Part shown: in pieces, positions 26,274 through 57,918 of the stretch | Numbering within the stretch: the first letter of the stretch is position 1 | Layout of the letters: each line of letters opens with the position of its first letter | NCBI RefSeq assembly: GCF_021869535.1 | Contig: NW_026262734.1 | Location: 111,290,001-111,354,000, forward strand | Direction of reading: 5' to 3' | Source: Mytilus californianus | Lineage: Eukaryota | DNA length: 64,000 bases | Notes under the pieces: generated by a model | What the model was told of the DNA's origin: nothing | Database searches by the model: none | Seen by the model: the letters and a program-made list of their open reading frames with translations, nothing else | Made by a program: the position numbers and the translations under genes

Positions 26274-26334
26274 ATGCATCTGTCCCTGCAATTGTTACTC
26301 AGTGTTCTAGGATTGTCTCTAGCAGACGACATTT
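26274..26334 (+). CDS. Gene A coding exon 1: signal peptide of a secreted Gly/Ser/Arg/Tyr-rich protein
   Basis: Acceptor TTCTTCTAACAG (26264), ATG at 26274, MHLSLQLLLSVLGLSLA|DDI, phase-1 donor GTAAGT at 26335. Not in the ORF track. Confidence 0.8.
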
Positions 26335-26344
26335 GTAAGTATGA

Positions 26345-26660
26345 ACTAAATACAAACACGTTTAACCCCGCCACATTCTGTATGTGCCTATCCCAAGTAA
26401 GGAGCCTGTAGGTGGTTGTCGTTGGTTCATGTCTGTCATATTTGTTCTTCGTAAATTGTATTGTTATACATTACGCCGTTAGTTTTCTTTTTTGATTTTT
26501 TTCACATTTTTTATGTCGGGGCCTTTTATAGCCGACTATACGGTATGGGTTTTTCTCATTGTTGAAGACCGAACTGTTGCATATAATTGCTTACATCAAC
26601 TTCATTTGAACTTTGGTGGGTAATTATCGCAATTGGCAATAATACCACATCTCCTTATTT
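26345..26660 (-). mobile_element. Abundant dispersed repeat copy in gene A intron 1
   Basis: Matches the copies at 2510-2810 and 8370-8680. Confidence 0.7.
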
Positions 26661-27347
26661 TTATTTATATCAAAGTTATTATTTTTTTTCAAAATAACGT
26701 ATATGTATGGTTGACAATGAGACAACTTTCTATAAGAGACGGAGAAGTTTAACTTGTTTCCTGTTTTGATAATTAATGAGAAGGACATGCCAAACTAAAA
26801 TAAAATGTTTATTTAAAGTAAAACTAAGTCGTGTCGTACATGCCTAAATTAATTCACTTTGATTCGGATGTAGTTCGATGTAAAAATATACAATTCACAA
26901 TACTGAATCAAAATGAATTTATACCTGAATGTACGTATAGCCCTTGCAAATTTTATTTTTATGAATGTCAAAATGTACAAAAGAAATGTACCTTATTGTA
27001 TATCATTTTGACTCTTTAATGTTCAAATCTCACTGATGATCTTCGAACTTCAAATCTTGACCTTATGAGTGAACAAATTCAGGTGAAACCAGTCATACAT
27101 CTTTCCTAGTCCCACAGTTATAAGATCGAAACAGTGACATTTTTATCCTTGCAAAAAAGAAAAAAAAACGAAGAAAGAAAATAAATTAAAAGGCCAAATA
27201 AATGAATATAAAAATAAACCAATAAGACATGTGTATTAAACCTTTCCAATCATAAATTTTAAATGACAAAACATTTTTCTATTTACCATTGCAAAATTAG
27301 CTTAAACATTATATATATGAAAAGTAATTTGTTTTATCATTTGTTAG

Positions 27348-27530
27348 GGAACTTTGGTGACTGGGATGATGACTATTCATACAACGGATATCAACCAACT
27401 GGTTTACTGCGTGGTGGTAGCCAAAGTTTTATGAGATATCCAACTTATCGCAGTTACAACAGGGGAAGTCGAGGTGTATCATCAGGATTTCGAGGAAATC
27501 GAGGAGGATCGTCAGGATTTCGAGGAAGCC
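27348..27530 (+). CDS. Gene A coding exon 2 (183 bp)
   Basis: TTTGTTAG acceptor and GTAAGT donor at 27531; (W)NFGDWDDDYSYNGYQPTGLLRGGSQSFMRYPTYRSYNRGSRGVSSGFRGNRGGSSGFRGS; in frame with exons 1 and 3. Confidence 0.88.
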
Positions 27531-27768
27531 GTAAGTGTCTTAAGATTTACTGTTCACAATCTGATTTAAATACAGATCCTGAATCCACTCTTTACTTACA
27601 CTCCGTTCTACTTTTAACGACTTTTCGGGATCCTTTGGTTTTGTCGTGATAATACACGTCTTAATATTTTTGAAAGCTGAACATCATTGGCTGATTTAAT
27701 AGTTACTAGAACAGGAAGTAGAATGATGTGTTGCCAAATGATTGTAAGGGAAGCATGGACATATGATA

Positions 27769-28987
27769 TGAGGGTATGGAGGGGTTTACAGAATAGGGAA
27801 TAATAAGCAAAGTAAAAAAAAAGAATAGAGAAAAATAGGCAATAAAAGTAAAGAGAAGAGAATAATGGGATAATATAAGATATTTTATTGGTTTAAAATC
27901 CAAAATTATAGGATTGTTACCAAAGACAGTAAACATTGGCTATACATAAACATGCAATCATATATCTGTCCACATTTATAAACATTGTATATATAAATTT
28001 GTATATCCCCTACATTATTAACAAGAAAATATGGTTACATTATTATATATATCTAATCTCTGCTGAGGAGGTTTCTAGAATAATTCTTATTATATCATTC
28101 TCACCACACGTATACAAAAATTTAAATCTTGCTTCATTATTCATATTTAAAAAAGAGGGAACTATTTCACTTATTTTAGAAAATGATTGTTCTCTAATTG
28201 TACATGTATTTCATTTTGCACATTTTATAGTGAAATGAAATTCATCTTCTACTTCTACTTGTAAAAGACACAAGGGACACATTCTTTCTTCTAAAGGAGT
28301 TTTAGTATGTTGACCTTGTTCAATTTTAAGAACACTATTACTTTCTTGATTTTGGCAAAATGTCCTATTACTTTTTTTTCAATGCTTAACATTAAATAGG
28401 TTTTCAATTTGTAATTTTCTTTAAGCTGTCTGTATGTTCTGAGCTTATTACCGTTCAATGATTTATCATCGCAAAACATATTTTCTTTCCAATAATTCAG
28501 GTATCTATCATTAAGTTTGTTATGAAGTGCGTACAATAAAAGCCTTTTTGAAATAGTATCCTAATTTTCCAACACATGTGAAAAAATTAATGTAGCAAGT
28601 AACTGTTCAATCTGTCTTGCAAATCCATTGGCAGGTTTGAACTATATACATCTTTAAGTAAACAATTATTACCAGATTTTATCACATGCAACCAGAAGCC
28701 AATTGACTGTTATAAAGCTTCTATAAAAACTGGATACATACCATGTTCAGCTAGTACTGCTAAATTGACAGCTGTTTTATTTACTCCAATTAAAGTTTTT
28801 GTAAATTTAATCTGAATTTTAATGGTAGCCATTGACCAATATTTTGACTCTAGATTTGTAATATCTTTAATCCTATAAGGAGACCAAACTTTACTACAAT
28901 AAAGAATGCTAAATTAGAAAGAATAGAGAAAAATGGGCACAAAAAATAAAGAATAAATAAATGAAGGATTCCCCATCCAGACCCTCA
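27769..28987. mobile_element. TIR element (TGAGGGT termini, TA TSD) carrying a nested LINE fragment
   Basis: TA|TGAGGGTATGGAGGGG at the left and CCCCATCCAGACCCTCA|TA at the right; internal AGAATAGAGAAAAAT blocks on both sides of the LINE piece. Confidence 0.65.
28230..28904 (-). pseudogene. Non-LTR retrotransposon (CR1/L2-group LINE) ORF2 C-terminal remnant
   Basis: My minus-strand translation gives LYCSKVWSPY...IKFTKTLIGVNKTAVNLAVLAEHGMYP...*QSIGFWLHVI; the ORF track gives YLNYWKE...NKLRTYRQLKENYKLKTYL. Both resemble the post-RT region of LINE ORF2; an in-frame stop is present. Confidence 0.75.
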
Positions 28988-29055
28988 TAAATATTTTTTT
29001 TCATGTTACATTTTTATAACATGTAATGAAACTTTTGATTGATTATTTTTTTCAG

Positions 29056-30498
29056 TTGGATCCACCGGACTCTCATATAATACTGGGTATAGTCAAAATA
29101 AAGGATACGGTTCCTATGGTAACAGTTATAGCGGAAGTCGAGGTTATGGCTCCAATGGCATCAACTATGGTAGTGGAATGTTAACGACTGGATCCTTAGG
29201 TACGTCGATAAGGCCATCAGGGAGGTCTAGATATTATTCGAAAAGTTCATCAATTATTAGACCAAGAGGCAATATTGGAAACAATTTTGGAATAAGGTCT
29301 CTCAATGACGACGACGATTTTGATGATATCAACATTGGTGTTCTTGGTCCTTCTGTTGCTAGGGCACAAACCGGAAGTCGATCTGTACGACCAACAATTA
29401 AGAATCATCAAAGAAAATCTGCTATTAGACCTTTAATAAACAATGTGCCGTCACCGATCAATATTGGAAGATCTTTTGATAACGACGAAGATGAAATAAA
29501 TAGAGGAGTTCTTGGGCCTGCTGTTGTTAGAAGCGGAGGCAGTAGAGCTTCCATACGGCCAATAGCCAAGAAAACGTATCACAGGAAACTAGCCTCTGTT
29601 CGAACCACTGGTAGTGCTGGTGTGGCACCATCACCTGTGAGAACATCTTTTGACGACAACGGAGATGACTTTGACGACGATAATGGTATTCTAGGTTTCA
29701 GTTCTGCAGGTCGACCTTCTGGTATAGCAAGAAAAATATCTCCAAGACTGGGATCCATTGGTAGATCATCTATTGGAATACAACCATCGTTTGGTAATGA
29801 TAGAGATGACTTTGACGACGATAATGGTATTCTAGGTTTCAGTTCTGCAGGTCGACCTTCTGGTATAGCAAGAAAAATATCTCCAAGACGGGGATCTATT
29901 GGTGGATCATCTATTGGAATACAACCATCGTTTGATAATGATAGAGATGACTTTGATAGAGATATACAAGACGATTTCAATGGGGATTTTCAAGATGACT
30001 TTAATGGTGGAATACGTGGGGCGTCTATAAATAGAAATGGTGGAATACTTGGGGCGTCTGTAAATAAAGCTGGGCCGACTTCAACGGGATCAATTACAGG
30101 TAGTCTGGGACCTGCTATAAACAGGGGTGGACATTCATCGCAGTCAAAATCTACTTACTACCACAGAAAACCACACCAGAATATACATGTAACGCATGTA
30201 CATAAATATCGACCGGATTACGATGAAGACAATTTTGGAAGTGCACCAGTATTTAACAGTAGACCACTATACGGTGGATATGCTGGATATGGTACACAGT
30301 ATCCACAATATGGGTCATATGGTTATAGAAGCGGTAACAGTTATGCCAATGGAGGCGGATTTGGAAGCGGAAACTTTGGTGGTGGATCTGGTTTTAGGGG
30401 TCGCTTCCGAGGTTCTGGCGGAGGAAGTGGTGGACGTGGCGGTTCCGGTTCCGGTGGTGGAGAAAGTGATGATTTTGATTTCGATGATGACGAAAGTG
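29056..30498 (+). CDS. Gene A coding exon 3 (1443 bp)
   Basis: TTTTTTTCAG acceptor; open frame starting (L)GSTGLSYNTGYSQNKGYGSYG and running through the 458-aa ORF to DDDES; GTAAGT donor at 30499; length is a multiple of 3. Confidence 0.92.
29664..29960 (+). repeat. 141-bp (47-aa) coding tandem repeat, 2 copies plus a partial
   Basis: DDFDDDNGILGFSSAGRPSGIARKISPR.GSIG.SSIGIQPSF.NDR; units start at 29664, 29805 and 29946. Confidence 0.95.
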
Positions 30499-30694
30499 GT
30501 AAGTATACGTTGAACAACTTCCTTTTTAATATGTCTTTAATAAAACAATTTTGATACTACAACTGATTTTGCTTGGTACAGATACATTGAGAAAAAACAC
30601 CAAAGATAGGCGAACAAATTATAACTGTGTACTGAGGTAATCTATCATTTAAAAAAATGTCTTATATCTCAGGAATTCAATATCAAGTCTTTTG

Positions 30695-30898
30695 ATAGGC
30701 CCTTTCACGGTTATTTCAGCCATATTGAATAGGGGAAGATTTTCATAGTGGAGGTGAAAATCCTTAAAAAACACGGGACAACATAATTGATACAGAACAG
30801 TTGCTTAGAAACATGCATATGTTTTCCCTTTCTTTATTACTATTTCCCCCTCCATCAAAAAAATTTGTCCCTATTCAATATATTTTTTAATGGCCTAT
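30695..30898. mobile_element. Small MITE-like insertion in gene A intron 3
   Basis: Terminal ATAGGCC/GGCCTAT and internal inverted repeat ATATTGAATAGGG (30722-30734) / CCCTATTCAATAT (30869-30881). Confidence 0.55.
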
Positions 30899-30960
30899 TT
30901 TTAAAAAAAAATCTTATTTGACAAGAGTATAAGATAAATTTATCATCAATATTTCAGCAG

Positions 30961-31179
30961 GATCTAGCGGTAGTTCTGGCAGCGGAGGTGGATTCGGCGG
31001 TGGATTTAATGGTCTGGGTGGTATTGGTGGTGTAGCAGGACGATTTGTCGGTGGAGGTTTTGGATCAGTTGGTGGTATTGGTAGTATCGGTGGCAACCAA
31101 GGTCGCTATTACGGATATGGAGTATATCCTAACAGTAAAAATATTAACCACTATGCTAACTATAAGAATAGTTACAGAA
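30961..31179 (+). CDS. Gene A coding exon 4 (219 bp; 222 bp with the alternative acceptor at 30958)
   Basis: TTTCAGCAG tandem acceptor; (G)SSGSSGSGGGFGGGFNGLGGIGGVAGRFVGGGFGSVGGIGSIGGNQGRYYGYGVYPNSKNINHYANYKNSYR; GTAAGT donor at 31180. Confidence 0.88.
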
Positions 31180-31795
31180 GTAAGTACTTAGATTAAATAT
31201 CAGCAGACATCAGCATACTATCATACACCAAATGCGAATAATTTACAAATATATTGAGAACATTATGCACTGTCCGGCGAGAATCTTACTAAATTATTAT
31301 TCCATCCCGAGACCGTAATTTTGTATACTTTTGAAAGCACCGTAGAAGTATTGACAATCAACGTTCTTATAACCTCTTAACCATCTTACGTGAAACCGAC
31401 ATAGTGTTTCACTATATCATGTATATGCTTAAGTCCATTTTGACAAAATGAAACATCAGTGAACACGGTTTGACTATACTGACAAGTTGCTTAAACGATA
31501 CTCTCCGATAACAACGCTTTTATAATTTTATTTATAATTTTCCCTCGAATGAAACTCGTTTTTATCTATATTGCCCTTAGGACCGTCAAAACCATTTCTT
31601 ATTACATAGGAATTGGGGATATCTTTATCAAAGAGATTCTTTATCCTTAGAACCTGTCGCAAAAAAAAAAACACCACCAAAATATACCAATTTAAAAAAA
31701 GAGCTATATGACATGCGCGATGACACGTAAACAATCTTCCATATCGAACTTTTTCTATACATGATCAATTGAGGGGGATGACACCTTTTTAGTAT

Positions 31796-32005
31796 GTGGG
31801 ATATAGGGGTAAAAAAGTGGGGATTAAGGGTATAGGGGGTAAGGAAAATAGGGATGTGGGATATAGGGGATGAAAAAAGTGGGGATAAAGGGTAAAGGGG
31901 GTAAGGAAAATAGGGATGTGGGATATAGGGGATGAAAAAAGTGGGGATAAAGGGTAAAGGGGGTAAGGAAAATAGGGATGTGGGATATAGGGGATGAAAA
32001 AAGTG
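31796..32005. repeat. Purine-rich 60-62-bp repeat, about 3.5 copies, inside a possible MITE (31770-32110)
   Basis: GTGGGATATAGGGG units start at 31796, 31856, 31918 and 31980; flanked by TGAGGGGG and CCCCCTCA. Confidence 0.85.
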
Positions 32006-32645
32006 AGATCTAGGAAAAATCATCCGAAAGGGAAAAAAATTGGGAGGTGTCAAAAAATTACAAAAAAAAGCCGGTTTTGTTAAATGGCCAACCCCGTGTC
32101 GACCCCCTCATTAATTATCATTTGTGTTTTATGTTATTGTTTTGTGGTATTTTGTTTTTTATTCCCGTCAATGTGTTTTTTTCTCTTCATCAAACTATTT
32201 AAATTTGAATATGTGTTAAGTATATATCTGTGATCTCAGTATATTGTTATCTGTTAGCTATTTATTCTTATCACATAATTTCACTCTATAAAATAATATT
32301 TTAATCACACAACATTACCTAGAACGTAAATACTACGATTCTTTAAATAAATAATGAAATAAATCATAAATTTTAAACTGATATATTCCGGATAAAATGT
32401 ATAAACGAAGTCCTTTTTTATTTAAATATTTTCAAGGCTCAAAGGTCATCCTGGCTCTTTTTAATTGATACAATTGGATAATGGTAATGTTTGTGTAATT
32501 AACCTGTAACAGCAGTGGTACTAAATGCATTATAAACCTGTTAGCTAAATTATTTTATATATTACATGCATTACGCTACACGTACGACCGAATTCGTTTA
32601 ATGTATTGGCATAATTAGTCTAACAACCTACTTTCTTCATTACAG

Positions 32646-32656
32646 AGTCATACTAA
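32646..32656 (+). CDS. Gene A terminal coding micro-segment (K-S-Y-stop)
   Basis: CTTTCTTCATTACAG acceptor; A|AG TCA TAC TAA completes the phase-1 codon; AATAAA follows 105 bp later. Confidence 0.65.
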
Positions 32657-32760
32657 TGGATTTTATGACCTGTGGACATATTGACTGGACAAAGAGGTCA
32701 TATTGGTCATTATGAGATTTGACATGTCATATTTACGTATGTCAAAGTGTGACTTCATGC

Positions 32761-36960: not shown

Positions 36961-37280
36961 TTAGTGCCGAATAATATTACTATAAAAAGCTGGATATGAA
37001 TTATTACTTTTTATTAAATTCCTTGAATGGGTATCATACTTCTATGATAAATCTCTATATTTGTTATTATTTAAAAAAAAAATCCACAATTCAATTGATA
37101 TCTATAAACTCTAAAAAGGTTTAAGTAATGAAAATATTGCGGTCATTTCAATCTGATAGGTCAATGTAAACACGGGCATATCGAACTAACTGAAAATTAT
37201 ACTCTTCGGTTTAAAAAGCACCCAAAACGGAACATTTCCACCAACTTATGGTATATTCTATATACACGTCATATTTCCCG

Positions 37281-37547
37281 CTTATGGTGTCACTTATGCT
37301 GACTGCTCCGTATCATCCGAGTTCAATATAAAATAAAATGTGGAATGATTGCCAATAACGTGAATGTTAGTAACAATCGACCAACGTACGGCTTTCAAAA
37401 ACGAGCAAAACCCACTTATGGTGTCACTTATGCTGACTGCTCCGTATCATCCGAGTTCAATATAAAATAAAATGTGGAATGATTGCCAATAACGTGAATG
37501 TAAGTAACAATCGATTTACGTACGGCTTTCAAAAACGAGCAAAACCC
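37281..37547. repeat. 134-bp tandem duplication
   Basis: CTTATGGTGTCACTTATGCTGACTGC starts at 37281 and 37415. Confidence 0.9.
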
Positions 37548-37739
37548 GTAAACACGGTATTCGGGGGGTTCATGTTGCCAATCTGTAGTTTTTTGTGAAG
37601 TGCTTGTGGACTGTTGTATATGTGTTTGTCTTTTTTTTTTACCATAATGGTGTTGGTTGTCTTTTAGACTTAGCGTTTGCCGCTGAATGACTCTTAAGTT
37701 TTTATCTGTGTTTATTGTACAAATTAAGCAATATTCAAG

Positions 37740-38105
37740 TGATATGTTGTGATGTTACACTATTGTTTCAGATAAGGGTGAAGGCTTGGTACCATTGAAA
37801 CGTTTAAACCCGCTGCAATTGTTTGCACCTGTCCTAAGTCAGGAATCTGATGTTCAGTAGTTGTCGTTTGTTGATGTGGTTCATAAGTGTTTCTCATTTC
37901 TCGTTTTTTATATAGATTAGACCGTTGGTTTTCCCGTTTGAATGGTTTTACACTAGGAATTTTTGGGGCCCTTTATAGCTTGCTGTTTGGTGTGAGCCAA
38001 GGCTCTGTGTTGAAGACCGTACTTTGACCTATAATGGTTTACTTTTATAAATTTTGACTTGGATGGAGAGTTGTCTCATTGGCACTCATACCACATCATA
38101 TATCT
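37740..38105 (-). mobile_element. Abundant dispersed repeat family copy
   Basis: Closely matches 52575-52870 and 63785-63935. Confidence 0.7.
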
Positions 38106-38108
38106 ATA

Positions 38109-38765
38109 TGGCTTTGAAAATAGTGCCACGTCAAGATCACTTGCTTTCTCATCGCTTTAAACTTATACCATACACATTCACTTAAATACGTGCAATGTGT
38201 CGATTGGTACAGGCACGTCCGTAAACAACATGTTATCGGTTTTCATACGATATGAAATGTTGTGATAGCACCAGGTGTCAAATGTTTTGCCAATAATACA
38301 ACACATATTAAATAAAACGAAAAACTACTCTAGATAATAAGGATACATATATATATATAGAAATAAGGAGATGTGGTATGACTAATAATGAAACAACTGT
38401 CCACCAGAGCCTAATGAAGTGAATGTATATTGTATAAGATACTGTGATTTTGATCATAAAATTAATGATATTTTGCAAGTTCAAAGCATTATGAATTCAA
38501 GTTACGTGGCTTTGAAAATGGTGCCACGTCAAGATCACTTGCTTTCTCGTTGCTTAAAACTTATGCAATATACATTCACTTACATACTTGCAATGTATCG
38601 ATAGTGGTACAAGCACAAGCTTGTGACAGCACCTGGTGTCAAATGCTTAGCCAATAAAACAACACATATTGATTAAAACGAAACACTGCTATGAATAATA
38701 TAAGGATACATATATAAAAATAAGAAGATGTGGTATGATTGCAACTATCCACCACAGTCTAATGT
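38109..38765. repeat. Older diverged duplication with a 398-bp period upstream of gene B
   Basis: TGGCTTTGAAAATRGTGCCACGTCAAGATCACTTGCTTTCTC starts at 38109 and 38507. Confidence 0.85.
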
Positions 38766-39616
38766 GACGTGGATGTAAGAAACTATACGTCACCGTACGG
38801 CCTTCAACAATGAGCAAACTTCACACCGCACAGAAAGCTATAAATGGCCCTGACAAGACAAAAGGTAGAACATTTCAATCGAAAAAAAAATTAACGCACA
38901 AATATTCTACAAAACAATAAACGAAAAACAAATATGACAGACAGCATTAAATTTTTTTGAAAAATAGCCCTTTGCTTAAAATAAATTCAAGGAAACTTTA
39001 AGTTTTAAATAACCTAAATACTTAAATACAAATTGTCCCATTTATACAGTGAAAACTTAGTAACTTCAATTTATTTGGTCTTATCACCAAAATTAATATA
39101 CCCACTTTTCATTGTTATCAAATATGCTAAAAATGTGTGACAACTCGGATCACAAACTGTCGACATTGTAATATTTTTTTGAACACCTACAAAAACTACT
39201 CTGGTAAAAAATGTATATTTCTTTGTACCTTTATTTTTTACATCCATGAAATGACCACTACAAGATTTTTCTAGTAAAACTAAAGCTCCTACACATTGAA
39301 CAGGTAGAGCAAGTACAAAATGGTCAAAATAATTAATAGTATTAATCATTCTAATGGGGAAGTTGTGTATTTTTTGCATTTTAAGTATAAAACTGAAACG
39401 AGACAATAAAAGCGAGTATTTTTTTATCTAGGCTCAAAGGACAAAGGTCTTGGATATACATATTATATACATAAATTGTTTTAAATCTAGTGTCATTTTT
39501 TATGAGCCGTGTATGAGTTAACATATTTCCTCTTTTTTCATAATCAACGCGCTTTCGGTAATTTATTTCAGATTTATAAAAAAAAATAGAATATTATTGT
39601 TTTTCAGGATTGGAGG

Positions 39617-39680
39617 ATGGAAAAACTGCTTGTATTCACGACGCTATTATTTATTGGAGCTACTGCCACAAATAACTACT
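39617..39680 (+). CDS. Gene B coding exon 1: signal peptide
   Basis: TTTTTTCAG acceptor (39607), ATG at 39617, MEKLLVFTTLLFIGATA|TNNY, phase-1 donor GTGAGT at 39681. Not in the ORF track. Confidence 0.82.
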
Positions 39681-40048
39681 GTGAGTGTAACAAACTTATA
39701 AAAAACAAATGTTTAGGCTTTTCACCAGCCTGGGGATGATTTTTTTTATTCCAATATTATATTCAGTGGACAGTTGTTACAGTATATTTTCTATCTACGA
39801 TTATGTACAATTGTAATTAAGAATAATTGTAAAATTATGTGATATTTGAATCTAAAATTTCGTAGTACCTATATTTAAATTTAAACACTGACAATATTTG
39901 TATATTTTTTTGTTTGCATAAATTTCGTCTTTGTTTGATAAAATTTGACCAAAATGATAAATGGTTATATAATTGTTTTTTTTTTTGTGTTGACTAACAT
40001 TAAAAGAAAGTCAGTTTTAAGTTTCATAGGAGTGTCTTATACTTACAG

Positions 40049-40192
40049 GGACGTATGAGCAAAATGAACCCCTCATTAATACAGGAAGTTTAGGTAACCC
40101 AGGTGGATGCCAATGCTCGTGCGAACCTGCTATAGAGCCACGTAGAGGGAGCGGCGCTTTATCAACAAACAGAAGACGCAGACGTAAAAACC
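40049..40192 (+). CDS. Gene B coding exon 2 (144 bp)
   Basis: CTTATACTTACAG acceptor; (W)TYEQNEPLINTGSLGNPGGCQCSCEPAIEPRRGSGALSTNRRRRRKN; GTAAGT donor at 40193. Confidence 0.85.
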
Positions 40193-40614
40193 GTAAGTTG
40201 GTATAGTTATAAGAATTCACTAAAGACTTTTTTATAAAAGTTCACAATTTTCACGATTATCATTTAAGACTTCATACTGGGAGAGCTATATTACCAAAAT
40301 ATCGCAAATTACCGCACTGTAATGTAAATAAAATTAAACTATTTCTATTGATATGTTTGAGAAGAACTTAGATAGTAACAGTTAAAAAATGTTAGTGAAA
40401 TGAAAAAGAATTAAATCCAGTCTACAAATGTCAATACACATTTTCAGAGTGCGGGTAACGAAGGCACTAACTAGTCTGTTTTTTTTATAAGTTTGAAAAA
40501 AAATGTTTGGCGAGTGAAAGAAATTCTTTCCGAACATCTTATTTTTCAAAAGAAGAAAATAATGAATGCACTTTCAGTATCAACAAGTACATTTCTATTA
40601 TTTTAATATCCTAG

Positions 40615-40923
40615 GCCGGAGACAGCGTCAACCAGTAATACCAGAAGTTATTCCTCAAACTCCTAATTTCATTGAAAGAGGCTCTCGTGGTATAAGAGTG
40701 ACTGACCCAATACCAGAAACAAGGGGCCTAGGAGGTGGAATCAGAGCTCCAGTATCAAAAACACAACGTCGAATTGGTGTAGGAGATGCAGTTTTACGTG
40801 GCGTTGCTGGTTTTGAAGGAGGTGCACCGTCTAGTGGAGTTTTACAGCCAGAATATAGATTTGATAATGGACATGACAACGGTTTTGTGGATAACGGTTT
40901 TGATAATGGCATACATGGCAACG
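40615..40923 (+). CDS. Gene B coding exon 3 (309 bp)
   Basis: TTTTAATATCCTAG acceptor; (R)RRQRQPVIPEVIPQTPNF...FDNGHDNGFVDNGFDNGIHGN; GTAAGT donor at 40924. Confidence 0.88.
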
Positions 40924-40942
40924 GTAAGTAAATATTAAAGAA

Positions 40943-41089
40943 TTGAATGCTTCTTTTTGTAACTTCATTGGGGTGTAAAACCGTTGACCGAAGTACATTT
41001 TGTATGAAGCGCGGAAGCGCTTCATTCTAAAAATGTGCGCACTGTCAACGCTTTTACAACCCTATGAAGTTACAAAAAGAAGCATTCAA
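40943..41089. repeat. 147-bp imperfect palindrome, part of a dispersed repeat, 20 bp after the exon 3 donor
   Basis: Perfect 26-bp outer arms TTGAATGCTTCTTTTTGTAACTTCAT / ATGAAGTTACAAAAAGAAGCATTCAA; inner stem ATGAAGCGC-GGAA-GCGCTTCAT. Confidence 0.9.
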
Positions 41090-41776
41090 TACTTATAATT
41101 ACATTTTTTAGCTAGGGTCATGATAACACGATTTTTATCAAGTTTTTATTTAATTTACCTGTGCATTTTATTGTGGGACCTCGTGTCATCATGAATGATA
41201 AATTTTATTGTGTAATGAAGTTGATTAAGGAATAACGCCAGATTGCAGTTAGCCAATCAGAATAACGTATTATAATGAAACATACATCTAAAGTAATTAT
41301 AAGCTTTTAGGTTAATCAGTACTTAATTTCATATATAGGTATATAACCTAATTTAAAAAAAAAATCTTCAACCCATATTTATTAGTCATGCATATGGATG
41401 CAAGAAAAGGAATGTCGAAGTATCCCAAAAACTAAATGACAGTACTTACAAATGGAAATACCATGCAGTTATACTTCAAAAATTGGAAAGCAAAAATATT
41501 GATACAAAACAAAAACTTAGAAAGATATACCTATCAATGCTGATTCAGAACTTTTGCTATTTGAACATCTTTGAAATCAAATGTGAAAGCGTATGGGGAT
41601 ATTTGACAACGGCGAAATGACAGGTATCCCAATATATCAATTGGAAATACACGTTTTTTGCTTTCATTTGTCATCCTTGGTTTGAGGCATTAAATATACC
41701 TAAAACGCAACCATTACTACATATTAAGGTTATTTTATTTATGTTTCCATATCTAAAATGCATTTGTTTATGTTGC

Positions 41777-41905
41777 NNNNNNNNNNNNNNNNNNNNNNNN
41801 NNNNNNNNNNNNNNNNNNNNNNNNNNNNNNNNNNNNNNNNNNNNNNNNNNNNNNNNNNNNNNNNNNNNNNNNNNNNNNNNNNNNNNNNNNNNNNNNNNNN
41901 NNNNN
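41777..41905. other. Assembly gap (129 N)
   Basis: Run of N in gene B intron 3. Confidence 0.99.
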
Positions 41906-42610: not shown

Positions 42611-42918
42611 CCATTGGTATTGATTCCAATGTGATTGGCGGCTCGACAGGCTTTCCAACAGAAGTAAATGGTGGTTTTGGTACAGATACTAATGTTGGAT
42701 TCGTTGGTGATCCTAATGTGGGACAGGTTACTGAAACAAACGGCGGGATACAGGGCAGATTTAACATTGGTGATCCTAATGTGGGACAGGTTACTGAAAC
42801 AAACGGCGGGATACAGGGCAGATTTAATGGAGATGGATTCTCTAATACAGGAAATATACGACAGGGGTCTTGGGGTTCAAAAAGTCGGAGGCGACATAGG
42901 AAAAAATACAAATATTAA
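42611..42918 (+). CDS. Gene B terminal coding exon
   Basis: TTTTTGACAG acceptor, phase 1; (A)IGIDSNVIGG...; contains a 63-bp (21-aa) duplication GDPNVGQVTETNGGIQGRFN at 42706 and 42769; ends GSWGSKSRRRHRKKYKY-stop. Total CDS is 825 bp. Confidence 0.85.
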
Positions 42919-43966
42919 TTTTTAAAAATAATATGTATAGAGCAAATATGTTATTCACAAGTAGAAACAATGAACGAAAATATATTTTATTGACAACAGA
43001 AGCAATTAAAAACATCTTGCAATTTCGATACCCAGAACGTCATTAGTTTTCAGACGAACATGAAATTGTATAAGAACGTCTACTCTGAGGACTCCTTGCC
43101 TTGCAATAACTTGCCCAATTATTTTATACTATCGTGTATCATCGTGCATAATCGTGTATTGTCGTGTATCATTGTGTATGCTCGTATAATATCGTGATTA
43201 AATATATATTTAATGACAATGTTGTTTTTTCAAACACAATTTTAAGACAACAATATTGTCTTGTAATATAAAAAATAGGCTATGTATTATGATTGCCAGT
43301 GAGACAAATATCCGTAAAGAAAAAAGTGTACAAATATGTGAACAATTACAGGTCATCGCAGGGCCTTCAAAAATGAGCAAAGTCCATCCCGAATAGTAAG
43401 TTATAAAAGACCACGGTGTGACAAAATGCTAGGCAACTGTTAACCATAAATACATAAAAAGAAATAGACATATTAGTTTTAACCAATTGCTACTAACCGT
43501 ATATTAAAATAAAACACGCCCACTAACCTCATATAAAATATACAGGGTCTCCACGTGTCTGCTTTTAACGAATGATATTCATAAAAATGTATCGGAGGTC
43601 AAATAAATTGTCATATACGAGTTTTATTGAAAGAAAATGTGGAGTTTATGTCATTAAAGCGTCTGTTTTAATGAATGTTTGTATCGCTTAAAGCTTAATA
43701 TTTATGTTGTTCTTGCTCGTGCATTGTCTAACTTCATGCATTCTATAAACTGTTTACATTATTGTTTAGGGCCAGCTGAAGCCCACAAACGGATGCAGGA
43801 TTCTCTCACTGCATTGAAGATCCATTGGTGGCCTTTGGCTGTTTTCTGCTCTTTGGTCGGTTGTTTTCTCTTTGACACATTCTCCGTTTCATTTCTCTAT
43901 TCTATTTCCACGAACGATATAAAATTGGAAGGGTTAAGTTTTTTTAAAATACCTTGTTAAGTCCTG

Positions 43967-44270: not shown

Positions 44271-45380
44271 AAGGGAGATAATTCAGAAGTTTACCGTATC
44301 GTATAACATTCTGTTAATATTCAAGTATTTGCTGCTGAATTCCTACAATACAAGAAAAAAAAATCGCGTTTGAAAATACCTTTAAAATAATAGAAAAGAA
44401 AGGATATGGGGTATTCATCCATGACACACTCGGCCAAAACTAAAAAAAAGAAAAGGAATAGCGCAAAGTTCATTAACTTTGTGAAGATCATTAGGATCAT
44501 AGCAAAGTGAAAACAAGGAATAAATGCAATTGACCAGATTATCATCGTTCCAAACCTTGCCAGATGCCATTTATAAGACTTATTGATACTTTGATAAGGT
44601 TTGAACAGGAATAACTATCCATAATCGTAAAAAGCTTTGTTTGTTATGTTCTATATTCATATAAAATTAAAATAATTTATTCTAAAATATGAAATAGTCG
44701 AGGATAAAATGAAAGAAAACAAAATCTAAAAATCGTAATATGATGTAAACGTAAACACAAAATTTAAATAAACATTAAAGATTTTAGATATGACTGTGGA
44801 GGGGGATTCGTCTACAGTCAAAAGGGATGTATAGAATATCTAAACAGTCGATTGAAAGAAATGGGAACGTAATATCCGATATCGCTAACATGAGCAACAC
44901 GACGGGTGCCACATGTGGAGCAGGATCTGCTTACCCTTCCAGAGCACCTGAGATCACCCCGCAGTTGTTTTTTTTTGGGGGGGGGGGGAAGGTTCTTGTT
45001 GCTCAGTCTTTAGTTTTCTATGTTGAATTTTGTGTACTATTGTTTGTCTGTTTGTCTGTTGGTCTTTTTCATTTTTAGCCATGGCGTTGTCCGTTTATTT
45101 TCGACTTATGAGTTTGAATGTCCCTCTGGTATCTTTCGCCTCTCTTTTGAGACCGTGTCACATTCAAGTCTATTCTAAGCACGTGTCTGACCTGTTGCAC
45201 ATGAATTCTGACTTATTTTCCATCTTTTTCCAATGGCAGTCCAAATATTCCGCCCTCCATCAAATAATTGCAACTGGACGTTAAGCAACCAACAACCAAC
45301 CAATCAAAGAAACTGCTTATCAGTCTGAGACAACGGAGTTTATTCACTATGTTTAATAGATTGTATGTTATTTAATTTTT

Positions 45381-47043
45381 TAATGTGTGTAGGATGTTAT
45401 TGTTGTTCTCTTTGTTTTTATAAAGTGTGTAGGATGTTATTGTTGTTCTCTTTGTTTTTATAAAGTGTGTAGGATGTTATTGTTGTTCTCTTTGTTTTTA
45501 TAAAGTGTGTAGGATGTTATTGTTGTTCTCTTTGTTTTTATAATGTGTGTAGGATGTTATTGTTGTTCTCTTTGTTTTTATAATGTGTGTAGGATGTTAT
45601 TGTTGTTCTCTTTGTTTTTATAAAGTGTGTAGGATGTTATTGTTGTTCTCTTTGTTTTTATAATGTGTGTAGGGTGTTATTGTTGTTCTCTTTGTTTTTA
45701 TAAAGTGTGTAGGATGTTATATTTTTATTGTTGTTCTCTTTGTTTTATAAAGTGTGTAGGATGTTATTGTTGTTCTCTTTGTTTTTATAAAGTGTGTAGG
45801 ATGTTATTGTTGTTCTCTTTGTTTTTATAATGTGTCTAGGCTATTATTGTTGTTCTCTTTGTTTTTATAAAGTGTGTAGGATGTTATTGTTGTTCTCTTT
45901 GTTTTTATAAAGTGTGTAGGATGTTATTGTTGTTCTCTTTGTTTTTATAATGTGTGTAGGATGTTATTGTTATTCTCTTTGTTTTGATAATGTGTGTAGG
46001 ATGTTATTGTTGTTCTCTTTGTTTTGATAATGTGTGTAGGATGTTATTGTTGTTCTCTTTGTTTTGATAATGTGTGTAGGATGTTATTGTTGTTCTCTTT
46101 GTTTTGATAATGTGTGTAGGATGTTATTGTTGTTCTCTTTGTTTTGATAATGTGTGTAGGATGTTATTGTTGTTCTCTTTGTTTTGATAATGTGTGTAGG
46201 ATGTTATTGTTGTTCTCTTTGTTTTTATACAGTGTGTAGAATGTTATTGTTGTTCTCTTTGTTTTTATAAAGTGTGTAGGGTGTTATTGTTGTTCTCTTT
46301 GTTTTTATAAAGTATGTAGGATGATGTGTGTAGGGTGTTATTGTTGTTCTCTTTGTTTTTATAAAGTGTGTAGGATGTTATTGTTGTTCTCTTTGTTTTT
46401 ATAAAGTGTGTAGGGTGTTATTGTTGTTCTCTTTGTTTTTATAATGTGTGTAGGGTGTTATTGTTGTTCTCTTTGTTTTTATTATGTGTGTAGGGTGTTA
46501 TTGTTGTTCTCTTTGTTTTTATAAAGTGTGTAGGATTTAATTGTTGTTCTCTTTGTTTTGATAAAGTGTGTAGGATGTTATTGTTGTTCTCTTTGTTTTG
46601 ATAAAGTGTGTATGATGTTATCGTTGTTCTCTTTGTTTTTATAATGTGTGTAGGATGTTATCGTTGTTCTCTTTGTTTTTATAATGTATGTAGGATGTTA
46701 TCGTTGTTCTCTTTGTTTTTATAAAATGTGTACGATGTTATTGTTGTTCTCTTTGTTTTTATTAAGTGTGTAGGATGTTATTGTTGTTCTCTTTGCTTTT
46801 ATAAAGTGTGTAGGATGTTTTTGTTGTTCTCTTTGTTTTTATTAAGTGTGTAGGAAGTTATTGTTGTTTTCTTTGCTTTTATAAAGTGTGTAGGATGTTA
46901 TTGTTGTTCTCTTTGCTTTTATAAAGTGTGTAGGATGTTATTGTTGTTCTCTTTGTTTTTATAAAGTGTGTAGGATGTTATTGTTGTTCTCTTTGCTTTT
47001 ATAAAGTGTGTAGGATGTTATTGTTGTTCTCTTTGTTTTTATT
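45381..47043. repeat. 40-bp minisatellite, about 41 copies
   Basis: AAAGTGTGTAGGATGTTATTGTTGTTCTCTTTGTTTTTAT. Confidence 0.97.
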
Positions 47044-53214: not shown

Positions 53215-53215
53215 G

Positions 53216-53693: not shown

Positions 53694-53766
53694 ATGGTGT
53701 TATATTTTCGACTGGTGTTGCCCATAGTGGTTTTGTTTTGCCTGACTTGCAGCGAAGCACATAAAG
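53694..53766 (+). CDS. Gene C coding exon 1: signal peptide
   Basis: TTCTTTTTAG acceptor (53684), GCCATGG start context, MVLYFRLVLPIVVLFCLTCSEA|HK, phase-1 donor GTAAAT at 53767. Not in the ORF track. Confidence 0.8.
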
Positions 53767-54970
53767 GTAAATAATTTGTATTATTTTCATATAATTCAAA
53801 TGCTGTAATAAGTCTATTCATGTTACCTGTTTCTATTTCATAAATATCTATTGAAAGGGTCGTACTTAAATTAGATTCTTATTTAATTTTTGACGATAAA
53901 TTATAAATAACAATTTCAAATAGCTGGTATTTGAATAGAAAATTCCGTCAATCAGAATCGAGCATTTAATTTGAAAAAGTATAGCTGCGTTAAAAAGCAG
54001 GCAAATAAGATTTGTCTTCGAACAAAAATGAATAATTAGTTGGACTTCCAAGTTTTTTTATTTGTTCTGTAAAGTGCCGCAAAACGGGACTCAAAGGTTG
54101 GACTGCCTCTGAATGGAAAGGGTATATTGGATAGGGACAGAGATTTTACTTTGGAAAAGGTCAACTTCATGTCACACTGTTAACAAGAGCTATCAGATTG
54201 AACGCACTGCTGTTAGTGCACTGTACGTGGCTTTGTATACACATACATCATATACATGTAAACCCAAATGGTGATACTGTCCCTTCTCAGTAAAGATCTT
54301 ACTGTCTCGAAGTTTATAACGGTATTGCATACATACATTTAAGAGAGCAGATGACGTATTTTCCGCCTTGACTTAAAGTTTCATATTTAGAATATTTTTT
54401 TGGAGTAAAGATCTTAAAATATGAATTCTGATATGGCTTCAGAAGTCACCATCTTGTTTCGAAAACAACCCGGTGACTCTACATATATATATATATTTAT
54501 ATATATTAGGAACATCAGTTGTTCGACCTGTTAGTCAAATGCGTATTGTTAAAATATATTTTTTCACTCTTTTGGTCTTTTGGAAAATGTTGTTTGTGCT
54601 GTATTTAGACCCCTCTACAACGAAATTTGTTACATGAACACGTATAAAAATTGCTGTTTTTATCCAACGCAATCATAGGTTTGAACGTTGTTTTCAATTT
54701 AGACTTGTATATATATATATATGGAACCCATTGTTTTTTCAGAAAAAAATCTGGCTAAAAATGTCCTAACCCACTCAGTTTTGCAAAATAATAAAATTTA
54801 TATACTGTATCAAAATTGTCTTCAACAGCAGTTTATTGCGCGGAATACAATGCTGATGTTATACATGATAAATAACAAAACGTTACGTATGTATATTGTT
54901 TACGTAAAGTGTTGAATTTTTTTTGAACATTATTCAGAACTGTATAAAAATTCCGATTCCAATAGGTTAA

Positions 54971-55580
54971 GGTAGATAGGGTGCCTTCCTCCATCTTGGA
55001 TTTTGAAAAAGCAGATAACAATCGGTCCAGATCTTTAATGAAATGTGCAAATTTCGAGAGTAGTATGTAATTCATGTGTAAGGTTTTTCATTTTAATATA
55101 GAAAATTATGTGTTTTATCATATTTACGGCTGTATTTTACAAAAATCAGATGATTTTTGTTTTATTCATTTTTCTTAAATTTTGCCATATAAGGGTAGAT
55201 AACTCAGATACAAGGGGAGATAACTCGATTAAGTAACTTTTGTAATAGAATGTGTTGTGAATTAACCTATTTTATTATGTAGCAAGAAAACAAGTCCCGT
55301 GACCCCATTATTTCTTTTTCTTATCTGAAAGCATATTATTAGAGCTATATTCTGATGTTCTATCTTAAAATTCTATGGTATAGTTTTCTTTTTATCACCC
55401 AAATTTGGGTTTTGCATGCATAATCTATACAAAATCTGACAATTTTGCGCAACCCGTAGCGTGAAAAAGAGCACGGTGACCCATACTTTTTATTTTATTT
55501 TTGAAAAATGCATGATATAAACTTCATTTTGACAAATTATCAAAAAATTCTATGGATTTAAATTAAGACCCCCATCTACC
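54971..55580. mobile_element. Non-autonomous DNA transposon with TTAA TSD (Kolobok-like)
   Basis: TTAA|GGTAGATAGGG at the left and CCCCATCTACC|TTAA at the right; RR...YY termini with a TTAA TSD fit Kolobok. Confidence 0.7.
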
Positions 55581-55738
55581 TTAAGCGACTTTGTGATATT
55601 GATACTGGAAGTTAAAGAACTACTGGGAAAATGGGTTAGACTTCTTTCTAAGTCGTCTTCTTAGCACTAAAGGTACTTTAAATAATTGGAATTTCAATAA
55701 CACCTTTTTTTGAAAAATAACCTTGTTAATCGTTTCAG

Positions 55739-56497
55739 CTTCTTATCCACGGAGGAAAGTATTGAAGTCATATGCACCATCCAAGATAAGAATCCAAGCT
55801 TACCATCCAAAAGGAAGCATTGGTTACCAATTAGCTCCTAAACGTGCATCCGGGTATAGTCAGAAAACAAGGAATTATGGGAAAATACTGGATACTCCCT
55901 ATGCGCCAAGGGTTCTGGTGAAACATGGCAGTCACACGCGTAATGGATACGGACTTCAAAGGAATAAATATTTGTCGAAGAAAGTTCCAAGTTATGCTGC
56001 ATTTAATAAGGGTTTAAAAGGAAAGACATATGTCTATATTCCTAAAGGTAAATTTGCATATGCTGGGCTAATGAAACAATATATACCCTCTAAAGGATCG
56101 AAGAAGTTTGGTCTTGGAAAGAAATCTAAATCATTGAAATCATTTAATGAGTTCGATATTGGAAGGAAATCTAAGTCGTTTGGAGGATCTTTAGAGTTCC
56201 GGGGTAAGGGAGATAGGGTAGGAGTCCATAACATTGGCCTTGGTGCTGACATAAGCTCATTTGGAATTGATCGCAGAGGAGGTATTGATAATATAGGTAT
56301 CGGCAGGGGAGGTCGTCAATTAACAGGAGATTCAAATTCGCTGCATGGACCAGTCGGAAATATTGGACGTTTTGGACCAGTCGGAATTGTTGGAAGTTTT
56401 GGACCAAAAGAATCAGCTGTAGCATTTGGAGGGGGTATTGGAAGCAGATTTAGTGGAGGTGGAGGTGAAAATTTCTTCATAACAGATAACAGATATG
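55739..56497 (+). CDS. Gene C coding exon 2 (759 bp): Lys/Tyr-rich block then Gly-rich block
   Basis: CGTTTCAG acceptor; (A)SYPRRKVLKSYAPSK...GGGENFFITDNRY; GTATGT donor at 56498; length is a multiple of 3. Confidence 0.88.
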
Positions 56498-56574
56498 GTA
56501 TGTTTTTGGGTAGCAGTGACCTTGTTTTTCAATTATCTCTACAGTAACACGATTGTTTCATATTATCTCGTAAA

Positions 56575-56870
56575 CAATAAGGAAATATGGTATGACTGCC
56601 AATGAGACAGCTATCTACCAGACTTCAAATGATGTGAATGTAATCAATTATAGGTCATCGTAGGGCCTTCAACAATGAGCAAAACCCAAACCATATAGTC
56701 GTCTTTAAAAGTACCAAACATTAAAATGAGAAACAATTCAAACGAGAAACCTTTAGGCCTAATTCATGACGAAATAATTTACGAAAAACAAATATGACTG
56801 ACATGAACAAACGACAATAACTGCATTACAGGCTCCAGACTTAGGATAGGCACTAAGAGAATGTTGCAGG
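56575..56870 (+). mobile_element. Abundant dispersed repeat family copy
   Basis: Matches 7440-7740 and 20570-20780. Confidence 0.7.
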
Positions 56871-57889
56871 GTTAACCATTGTCAAACTTGTTGATGTGAC
56901 AAAGTGAAGACACATGATGTCGATACGGGAAAATAATCATAATTTCTAGCAATAAAAAAAACATGACTTTATCCTGAAGTGCAAATACACAGCTTCAATA
57001 TTAATGATAAAAAAGCAAGAATATTTCACCTTAGAAATATATTTCTAAGGTTTGTGGATTTTTGTGCATGATAGTTCTCTCAATTGCAATCATACCACAG
57101 ATTTTATCCCTATTTTTATTGATAGAATATTAACTATTTTTACTATTAACAAATAAGAAGTATACAACGAGAGACCAAATAACACAATAAATCACGATTG
57201 TAGTCGGAGAAATATGTTCTGTGGTAGAATATGATATTAATATAATTTTGAATGTTTTGTTTCGTATTTTTTTTGTGACTCTATTTGTTTTTATTAGACT
57301 ATAACAAATGTGTTTTATATAAAGTCCGAAAGAGTTTGTCCCCTGTTCTTAGAGCGGGTATAGACGTATTTATGTAAACAGCTGACATTAAAGGGGCATT
57401 AGCTACGAGATATAAACAAGTTGCTTTCTTTAAAAAAAAGAAAAGCAATACGTGAACCTAAGACCGCTACCGTAACTGGTCACCAAAAGACTGTTGCTGA
57501 ATTTTTTTTTGCTTTTGAATTGAAATAATTGACTGTGAATAGAAGGGCTAATGGTGAAGTTAAACTACCTTTATCAAAAATATGTAATAGTGTGTACATT
57601 CTTGCACAAGTCAGTTGAAAGCAATGTTGGATAGGTGTGAATAGAAAAGTGTATATACAGCTACTATTTGAATATACATTTTACTTGAAAGCTCGACTAT
57701 TTCATTTATTACTTGGGATTGTATATCATTTTTTTTATAATCCTATTGCAAATCCCAGTTTTTACAAACCGGATGTATAATTCAAATTGCACAAACCAAT
57801 CGCAATATAAATTTAAGCACTCAGTTTGCTTTATAATCTGGATGCATTTATTTTATCTATGACATCTTTATATTTTGTTTCCTGCATAG

Positions 57890-57918
57890 ATGCCTTCATA
57901 TTCTCAACTCGTTATTGA
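57890..57918 (+). CDS. Gene C candidate terminal exon (D-A-F-I-F-S-T-R-Y-stop)
   Basis: TTTTGTTTCCTGCATAG acceptor; the phase-1 join gives DAFIFSTRY-stop, echoing the preceding FFITDNRY. It lies inside the TIR-bounded unit and no canonical AATAAA is nearby, so it is uncertain. Confidence 0.45.

What the first reader, a model, noticed from the sequence alone, without database searches (positions are those of the whole stretch)
26274..57918. Cluster of three co-oriented genes for secreted low-complexity proteins, a candidate bivalve structural-material locus
Seen: three genes built by hand from splice signals. Each has a signal-peptide exon absent from the ORF track and no recognisable folded domain. 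They have block-wise composition (Gly, Tyr, Arg/Lys, Asp), and the predicted proteins end in Tyr. Known: bivalve shell, periostracum and byssus proteins are typically secreted, repetitive low-complexity proteins and often occur in genomic clusters. Inference: these may be co-secreted components of one material. I do not recognise any of them as a named protein.
Basis: partly seen in the sequence, partly recalled or inferred. Interest (0 to 1): 0.85.

Follow-up and report, generated by a model that had tools for sequence, protein, structure and literature searches.

The report
Three linked mussel secreted low-complexity genes
Three neighbouring California-mussel genes really do encode secreted, disordered, glycine-rich proteins of the kind that build shell or byssus. 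All three are already in RefSeq as "uncharacterized", and their tissue and function are still untested.

Summary
The window is Mytilus californianus chromosome sequence. The three hand-built genes are real, and all three are already RefSeq models.

- **Gene C:** XP_052073731.1 confirms the first junction. Its last exon is at 62233-62246 (protein ends ...EVTK), not near 57918, so C does not end in Tyr.

None of the three has a Pfam domain. AlphaFold gives no fold for B or C. Composition is block-wise and all three are basic overall. They are not detectable paralogues of each other.

The order A-B-C is kept in M. coruscus and M. edulis, and A-B in M. galloprovincialis. Distant A and B homologues exist on unidentified, presumably mytilid contigs. 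The B homologue keeps its CxCxC motif, polybasic stretch and basic ...YKY end.

The basic Tyr ends of A and B resemble, but do not match, the shematrin/KRMP C-terminal signature. I obtained no tissue or co-expression evidence: the one RNA run laid on gene B showed no reads on its exons.

Verdict: lineage-restricted members of the common class of secreted repetitive low-complexity matrix-type proteins. "One material" remains a hypothesis. The scan noted these same stretches before as first-reader notes only.

The parts
26274..26334 (+). Gene A exon 1: start codon and signal peptide (MHLSLQLLLSVLGLSLA|DD), ends in phase 1
   Evidence: identical to P0001
27348..27530 (+). Gene A exon 2: acidic Trp/Tyr head, then basic Gly/Ser/Arg/Tyr block
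29056..30498 (+). Gene A exon 3 (481 codons): alternating Asp-rich (DDFDDD) and basic/hydrophobic (GILG..RP..K) blocks, including a 141-bp x2.1 tandem repeat at 29662-29956; then a His-rich block, a Gly/Tyr block and an RGG/GGS block
30961..31179 (+). Gene A exon 4: Gly/Phe-rich block and Tyr/Asn/Lys tail. An alternative acceptor 3 nt upstream (30958) gives RefSeq isoform X1 (639 aa)
32646..32656 (+). Gene A exon 5: last residues ...KSY and the stop codon
   Evidence: 5-exon CDS of 1917 nt = P0001
37479..37499 (+). Gene B upstream exon used by RefSeq (MIANNVN, donor GTAAGT). It lies in the second copy of a 134-bp duplication and is probably 5' UTR, because orthologue models start at MEKL
39608..39680 (+). 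Gene B signal-peptide exon.
40049..40192 (+). Gene B exon: acidic head with CQCSCEP and the start of the polybasic run RRRRRKNRRRQR
40615..40923 (+). Gene B exon: conserved core (FIERGSRGI..TDPIPE..., NGFVDNGFDNG)
   Evidence: dN/dS 0.38 against another Mytilus
41777..41905 (.). Assembly gap (N run) inside gene B intron 3; not coding. Its letters were not looked up
42611..42918 (+). Gene B last exon: Gly/Asn/Asp core with an exact 63-bp duplication (42704-42827), then the basic tail ...KSRRRHRKKYKY and stop
53694..53766 (+). Gene C exon 1: signal peptide (MVLYFRLVLPIVVLFCLTCSEA|HK), ends in phase 1
55739..56497 (+). Gene C exon 2: Lys/Tyr-rich cationic block (res 25-160: K 17.6%, Y 10.3%, pI 10.6), then a Gly/Phe/Ile block almost free of Tyr
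62233..62246 (+).
   Evidence: orthologues end EEVTK

Best explanation
**What it is.** These are three real, single-copy, adjacent and co-oriented Mytilus californianus genes: LOC of XP_052073486 (A), LOC127712979 (B) and LOC127711656 (C). Each opens with a short phase-1 signal-peptide exon and encodes a secreted, basic (pI 9.6-10.3), intrinsically disordered protein built of compositional blocks.

**Most likely role (inferred, not shown).** They are extracellular structural-matrix components of the repetitive-low-complexity class. A and B most resemble mantle-secreted shell-framework or periostracum proteins of the shematrin/KRMP type.

**Inferred mechanism.**
- After secretion, the oppositely charged blocks drive condensation and binding to Ca2+/mineral or to acidic partners. 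These blocks are the Asp-rich DDFDDD runs against Arg/Lys runs in A, the acidic Gly/Asn core flanked by two polybasic runs in B, and the Lys/Tyr block in C.
- The Gly-rich blocks provide a flexible framework.
- The Tyr-rich blocks and basic Tyr ends are substrates for tyrosinase-type cross-linking that makes the material insoluble.
- B may additionally be cut at its conserved polybasic run, releasing a small CxCxC head.

**Shown versus inferred.** Shown: gene structures, secretory-type N-termini, absence of domains or predicted folds, block composition, conservation and synteny. Inferred: tissue, material, cross-linking, processing, and any cooperation among the three.
For: - **Gene models:** reproduced exactly from the window, with RefSeq identities.
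- **No domain or fold:** no Pfam hit, AF2 pLDDT 32 and 38, no internal hydrophobic segment.
- **Block composition:**
  - A: res 161-400 are 13.8% Asp, res 481-520 are 30% Gly and 20% Tyr, res 611-638 are 28.6% Tyr.
  - B: the core has pI 4.7, between a 14-residue stretch that is 57% Arg/Lys and a tail of pI 11.9.
  - C: res 25-160 are 17.6% Lys and 10.3% Tyr.
- **Conservation:**
  - A orthologues exist in M. trossulus, M. edulis, M. galloprovincialis and M. coruscus, with the C-terminal ...KSY kept.
  - Most Tyr and Lys positions in the basic block of C are invariant across Mytilus.
  - B exon 3 has dN/dS 0.38.
- **Distant homologues:** found for A (44% identity) and for B. The B homologue keeps CQCSCEP, the polybasic run and an RRRRRRYKY end.
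- **Synteny:**
  - M. edulis CAG2227853 fuses A+B+C.
  - M. coruscus CAC5400522 fuses A+B and is followed by CAC5400523 = C.
  - In M. galloprovincialis, A and B lie 14 kb apart on the same strand.
- **Literature:** shematrins and KRMPs are Gly/Tyr-rich secreted shell proteins with basic C-terminal RnKmY signatures such as RKKKY and RKYKY (PMC3896809). Lineage-restricted, disordered, modular RLCD proteins dominate mantle secretomes (PMC4897951).
Against: - There is no expression or tissue evidence. RNA run X15 gave zero depth on gene B exons, with about 6% of the run read and the tissue unknown.
- No spliced transcript-derived copies appeared among the database hits. The Logan/ENA members are unspliced genomic exon ORFs.
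- Six diagnostic peptide strings were absent from the supplements of the M. galloprovincialis and Perna viridis shell proteomes and of an M. coruscus mantle transcriptome.
- No hit to any named shell or byssal protein came up in three word-seeded searches and one exhaustive HMMER search.
- The C-terminal motifs of A (YRKSY) and B (RKKYKY) do not exactly match any listed shematrin/KRMP signature, and C ends EVTK.
- The His-rich block in A, its Gly-rich hydrophobic block, and the Lys/Tyr block in C would fit byssal proteins equally well.
Confidence: 0.4

Rival explanations
1. They are byssus or foot-gland proteins (plaque, cuticle or thread-matrix components) rather than shell proteins. On this reading they are stored as condensates in foot glands and cured by DOPA/Lys chemistry and His-metal coordination.
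For: - Gene C res 25-160 are Lys 17.6% and Tyr 10.3% at pI 10.6, with SYAPSK / YIPKGK-type motifs and conserved Tyr/Lys positions.
- Gene A has a His-rich block (15% His, res 441-480) and a hydrophobic Gly-rich block.
- The family appears restricted to mussels.
- From established knowledge, mussel foot proteins are basic, Tyr/Lys/Gly-rich and disordered.
Against: - Whole-protein Tyr is only 1.8-5.7%, well below classical foot proteins.
- Long poly-Asp blocks as in A are more typical of calcifying matrices.
- No hit to any named foot protein.
- No foot expression data were obtainable.
- DeMartini et al. 2017, the M. californianus foot-gland catalogue, could not be read.
Confidence: 0.25
2. They are secreted but not structural. 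Gene B would be a convertase-processed precursor of a bioactive or antimicrobial peptide, and A and C would be mucus, immune or other soluble secreted disordered proteins.
For: - In gene B, the polybasic run after a small Cys-containing head is conserved in a 44%-identical homologue.
- All three proteins are cationic overall.
- Other Gly-rich cationic secreted genes in this genome were read as host-defence candidates by earlier notes (leads only).
Against: - The proteins are large (29-67 kDa) and block-modular, with Gly/Tyr and poly-Asp segments.
- The 12-residue Arg run is far longer than a convertase site needs.
- No similarity to known peptide families (Pfam).
Confidence: 0.15
3. The three genes are merely neighbours. 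They would be unrelated lineage-specific secreted genes with different tissues and roles, so there is no single 'locus' function.
For: - No detectable homology among A, B and C.
- Intergenic distances are 7-11 kb and filled with satellites and repeats.
- Gene C lacks the Tyr end.
- Secreted low-complexity genes are very common in this genome.
Against: - Order and orientation are conserved in M. coruscus, M. edulis and (for A-B) M. galloprovincialis. These species are close relatives, however, so synteny is weak evidence.
- All three share the same design: a phase-1 signal exon and a basic, Gly-rich, disordered body.
Confidence: 0.4

Closest known systems
Shematrins (Pinctada shell prismatic-layer framework proteins)
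   Same: Secreted, Gly-rich with Gly/Tyr stretches, disordered and modular, with a short basic C-terminus ending in Tyr. The listed signatures are RKKKY, RRKKY and RRRKY (PMC3896809). Gene B ends RRRHRKKYKY and gene A ends YRKSY.
   Different: - No detectable sequence homology.
- The exact C-terminal signature is not present.
- A carries long poly-Asp and His-rich blocks.
- B has a CxCxC head, polybasic run and Gly/Asn/Asp core that are absent from shematrins.
- Mantle expression and shell location are untested.
KRMPs (lysine-rich matrix/mantle proteins of pearl oysters)
   Same: Secreted, with a basic Lys-rich block after the signal peptide (compare gene C), a Gly/Tyr-rich region, and a C-terminal motif such as RKYKY (PMC3896809). 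Gene B ends KKYKY, and its distant homologue ends RRYKY.
   Different: - KRMPs are about 10 kDa; these proteins are 29-67 kDa.
- The KRMP Lys/Trp lead domain is absent.
- Gene C, the Lys-rich one, ends EVTK and has its Tyr in the basic block rather than in a Gly/Tyr tail.
Mussel foot proteins / thread matrix proteins (byssus)
   Same: Restricted to mussels, secreted, basic and disordered. They share Tyr next to Lys, Gly/Asn/Tyr stretches and His-rich segments.
   Different: Overall Tyr content is much lower, there are no known mfp repeat motifs or EGF domains, no homology was found, and foot-gland expression is untested.
Generic molluscan RLCD shell-matrix/mantle-secretome proteins (PMC4897951)
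   Same: Lineage-restricted, signal peptide plus modular repetitive low-complexity domains, disordered, and evolving by repeat gain and loss. A has an extra 47-aa repeat in M. californianus; B has a 21-aa exact duplication.
   Different: Membership of a shell matrix has not been demonstrated.

Membership tests
Shematrin | N-terminal signal peptide | tested here: met
   Hydrophobic N-termini with small residues at -3/-1, and an AF2 N-terminal helix for B and C. No SignalP was run.
Shematrin | Gly/Tyr-rich GnY repeat domains | tested here: inconclusive
   A has Gly/Tyr blocks (res 81-120, 481-520: 30% G, 20% Y) but not regular GnY arrays. B and C lack them.
Shematrin | C-terminal signature RKKKY / RRKKY / RRRKY / IRRKK / PRKKY (PMC3896809) | tested here: not met
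   A ends YRKSY, B ends RKKYKY, C ends EVTK. B is similar but not an exact match.
Shematrin | Detectable homology to Pinctada shematrins | tested here: not met
   Only Mytilus and unidentified metagenome-derived hits were returned. Searches of low-complexity queries have limited reach.
Shematrin | Mantle-edge expression and presence in the shell prismatic layer | not testable with these tools
   No tissue-labelled RNA data. Peptide strings were absent from two shell-proteome supplements.
KRMP | Small (~10 kDa) protein with a Lys/Trp-rich domain directly after the signal peptide | tested here: not met
   Sizes are 29-67 kDa. The basic block of C has no Trp.
KRMP | Short basic C-terminal motif RKYKY / RPKKY / RRKY | tested here: inconclusive
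   B ends KKYKY, and its distant homologue ends RRYKY. This is a near match for one of the three genes only.
Mussel foot proteins | High Tyr (DOPA) with Lys/Arg, basic pI | tested here: inconclusive
   C res 25-160 are Y 10.3%, K+R 23.5%, pI 10.6. Whole proteins are only 1.8-5.7% Tyr.
Mussel foot proteins | Foot-gland expression and presence in byssus | not testable with these tools
   Run tissues are coded, and the one reads call showed no RNA on gene B.
RLCD-type secreted matrix proteins (generic class) | Signal peptide, modular repetitive low-complexity blocks, predicted disorder, lineage restriction | tested here: met

The most novel reading that the evidence does not exclude
The A-B-C trio would be a conserved mytilid 'material cassette'. 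Three non-homologous but co-regulated genes would supply complementary parts of one quinone-tanned extracellular material: a block polyampholyte (A), a convertase-processed acidic core with polybasic anchors (B) and a Lys/Tyr cationic cross-linker (C). One candidate material is the periostracum. To my knowledge the genes for its basic Gly/Tyr-rich precursor proteins in Mytilus have not been pinned down.
Probability: 0.12. Interest if true: 0.6.

Novelty: new member of a known kind. Interest (0 to 1): 0.3.

Why it matters
If tissue data place these proteins in shell, periostracum or byssus, they would add three sequence-defined block architectures to the catalogue of mussel biomaterial proteins:
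- a poly-Asp/Arg polyampholyte;
- a polybasic-flanked Gly/Asn core;
- a Lys/Tyr diblock.

They would also give a small conserved gene neighbourhood in which to study co-regulation. As it stands, this is a correct re-discovery of three already-annotated, uncharacterized, lineage-restricted genes of a very common class in bivalve genomes.

Tried and rejected
- **Paralogy among A, B and C.** BLASTP gives E >= 0.15, with compositional matches only. Rejected.
- **'Transmembrane protein' (the RefSeq name of A).** There is no hydrophobic segment beyond the signal peptide. Rejected as a composition-driven name.
It has a plausible acceptor but is contradicted by RefSeq and by the conserved EVTK end in orthologues. 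Rejected.
- **RNA confirmation by reads.** Reads were laid on gene B (37400-43000), the gene then without independent support and holding the N gap. RNA run X15 and the seawater RNA run X1 covered only dispersed repeats. X2 looked like DNA, because its contigs run into introns. Result: no junction evidence and no tissue information.
- **Literature.**
  - Accession and locus IDs, and 'DDB_G0289901' together with Mytilus, occur in no held paper.
  - Peptide strings were absent from the supplements of PMC4517812, PMC6641155 and PMC10639161.
  - Four other papers hold no supplements.
  - DeMartini 2017 (PMC5493799) is not held.
- **Synteny in the distant relative.** No A or C homologue lies within 10 kb of the gene B homologue on L004.
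- **Joined-model searches.** All searches used single exons by reference or stored protein ids.
- **The N gap.** Its letters were not inspected, although the public assembly locus L002 differs from the window at exactly those 129 places.

Full report
**Origin of the window.** The large exon of gene A and exon 2 of gene C match RefSeq proteins of Mytilus californianus at 100%. A public-assembly locus (GCA_021869535.1, JAKFGE010000008.1) is identical to the window over 25.4 kb, except at 129 positions equal in number to the N run. I did not inspect those letters.

**Gene A (26274-32656, +).**
- The five exons give a 1917-nt CDS. Its 638-aa product is identical to XP_052073486.1, isoform X2.
- Isoform X1 (639 aa) differs by one Ala from a NAGNAG acceptor at 30958/30961.
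- The RefSeq name 'transmembrane protein DDB_G0289901-like' is compositional. There is no hydrophobic segment beyond the signal peptide and no Pfam domain.
- The protein is 20% Gly, 14% Ser, 8% Arg and 7.5% Asp, with pI 9.6 and no Cys. It is built of blocks:
  - an acidic Trp/Tyr head;
  - a basic Gly/Ser/Arg/Tyr block;
  - a 240-residue zone alternating DDFDDD-type runs with basic and hydrophobic GILG...RP...K motifs, including a 47-aa tandem repeat;
  - a His-rich block;
  - a Gly/Tyr block;
  - an RGG/GGS block;
  - another acidic run;
  - a Gly/Phe block;
  - a Tyr/Asn/Lys tail ending RKSY.
- Orthologues exist in M. trossulus, M. edulis, M. galloprovincialis and M. coruscus. All end ...KSY and differ mainly by repeat gain and loss.
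- A 44%-identical exon-3 homologue occurs on short metagenome-derived contigs of an unidentified organism.

**Gene B (37479/39617-42918, +).**
- The word-seeded search could not see full-length relatives of a single 102-aa exon. The exhaustive HMMER search, however, returned XP_052075521.1, LOC127712979, 263 aa.
- I rebuilt that protein exactly from the window. That last segment is a 63-nt stretch with GT..AG ends inside an exact 63-bp duplication.
The upstream ATG is therefore probably in the 5' UTR. The second copy is either a M. californianus or allele-specific duplication, or is skipped by read alignment.
- The assembly gap 41777-41905 lies in intron 3. The exon 3/4 join (...NGIHGN|AIGIDSN...) is continuous in RefSeq and in three other species, so the gap does not affect the coding sequence.
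- Architecture:
  - signal peptide;
  - an acidic head with CQCSCEP;
  - an Arg-rich run, RRRRRKNRRRQR;
  - a Gly/Asn/Asp core of pI 4.7;
  - the tail KSRRRHRKKYKY.
- On a 424-kb contig from an unidentified source (ENA ERZ21930238), a 44%-identical homologue keeps CQCSCEP, RSRRRKKRK and an RRRRRRYKY end. These features are therefore under constraint.
- dN/dS for exon 3 against another Mytilus is 0.38.
- AF2 with a 7-row alignment gives mean pLDDT 38 and only the signal helix.

**Gene C (53694-62246, +).**
- The first junction is right.
- RefSeq XP_052073731.1 (LOC127711656, 281 aa) ends ...NRYEVTK. It is reproduced by the donor at 56497 and a last exon at 62233-62246.
- The M. trossulus and M. 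edulis orthologues end EEVTK.
It lies in intron 2 and is not supported, so C does not end in Tyr.
- C is a diblock:
  - Residues 25-160 are 17.6% Lys and 10.3% Tyr (pI 10.6), with most Tyr and Lys positions invariant across Mytilus.
  - Residues 161-281 are 26% Gly, rich in Phe and Ile, and nearly free of Tyr.
- AF2 mean pLDDT is 32.

**Cluster.**
- A, B and C share no detectable homology, and each search found only one M. californianus gene.
- Order and orientation are conserved:
  - an M. edulis model (CAG2227853, 1079 aa) fuses A+B+C;
  - M. coruscus CAC5400522 (849 aa) fuses A+B and is followed by CAC5400523 = C;
  - in M. galloprovincialis, A and B are separate RefSeq genes 14 kb apart on the same strand.
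- No other gene is called between or just after them.
- These species are close relatives, so synteny is only weak evidence of functional linkage. No A or C homologue lies within 10 kb of the distant B homologue.

**Expression.**
- The one run search (on gene A) listed no clear RNA holder. The best was a seawater oligo-dT run with a 0.17 word share, which I could not lay.
- The one reads call went to gene B. RNA run X15 (raw reads, about 6% read) and X1 had no depth on any gene B exon; only high-copy repeats were covered. The DNA run X9 covered the whole stretch, and X2 behaved like DNA.
- Tissues are coded, so this neither supports nor refutes expression.
- Indirect support for transcription is the RefSeq models themselves: a NAGNAG isoform pair in A, and a UTR-like exon and a 63-nt skip in B. 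These are features that, to my knowledge of the NCBI pipeline, come from transcript alignments. This is an inference.

**Comparison with known families.**
- Shematrins and KRMPs are secreted Gly/Tyr-rich pearl-oyster shell proteins with short basic C-terminal signatures: RKKKY, RRKKY, RRRKY... for shematrins and RKYKY, RPKKY, RRKY for KRMPs (PMC3896809).
- B (RKKYKY) and its distant homologue (RRYKY) come close. A (YRKSY) comes less close, and C not at all.
- Size, domain order and lack of homology rule out membership.
- The trio fits the generic class of lineage-restricted, disordered, modular RLCD mantle-secretome proteins (PMC4897951).
- The Lys/Tyr block in C and the His-rich block in A fit byssal proteins equally well.
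- Peptide strings from all three were absent from three supplement sets, and no paper in the library mentions the accessions.

**Verdict.**
The 3' end of gene C and its Tyr terminus are wrong.
- The genes are already annotated but uncharacterized.
- The structural-material reading is plausible, and 'one co-secreted material' is untested.
- This is an ordinary member of a very common class in this genome. It has a few modestly interesting conserved features: the CxCxC/polybasic/YKY design of B, and conserved linkage.

Noticed in passing
window 11870-12439 (+): Exon of a two-pore-domain (K2P-type) potassium channel gene upstream of the cluster. It hits Pfam Ion_trans_2 at E 5.8e-21, with two matched stretches.
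   Followed up: partly
window 16453-20308: A 3.9-kb satellite of a 26-bp unit (about 148 copies, 78-80% matches) with very strong GC and AT skew.
   Followed up: no
window 45376-47042; 22258-23045; 9472-10352: Further minisatellites lie between and upstream of the genes: 40 bp x41, 39 bp x20 (98% identical, producing long spurious ORFs), and 39 bp x23.
   Followed up: no
window ~37587-38147, 38709-39082, 40930-41326: Very high-copy dispersed repeats in and around gene B introns. DNA contig depths reach the millions, and reads in RNA run X15 fall on both strands. They are probably transposable-element fragments.
   Followed up: no
window 42704-42827: An exact 63-bp (21-aa) tandem duplication in gene B's last exon. 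The RefSeq protein and all orthologues carry one copy. Removing 42727-42789 (GT..AG ends) reproduces the RefSeq protein. It could be a copy-number allele, a mini-intron or an alignment artefact; this is unresolved.
   Followed up: partly
window 37277-37547: A 134-bp tandem duplication holds two copies of the MIANNVN mini-exon (37345 with donor GTTAGT, 37479 with donor GTAAGT). RefSeq uses the second.
   Followed up: partly
window 30958/30961: A NAGNAG tandem acceptor in gene A gives RefSeq isoforms X1 (639 aa, extra Ala) and X2 (638 aa).
   Followed up: yes
window 41777-41905 vs L002: The public assembly locus differs from the window at exactly 129 positions, the length of the N run. The stretch may therefore be masked rather than a true gap.
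   Followed up: no
L004 15349-16636 (-): EF-hand (calmodulin-like) ORFs lie about 5 kb downstream of the distant gene B homologue, on the 424-kb contig of unidentified origin.
   Followed up: no
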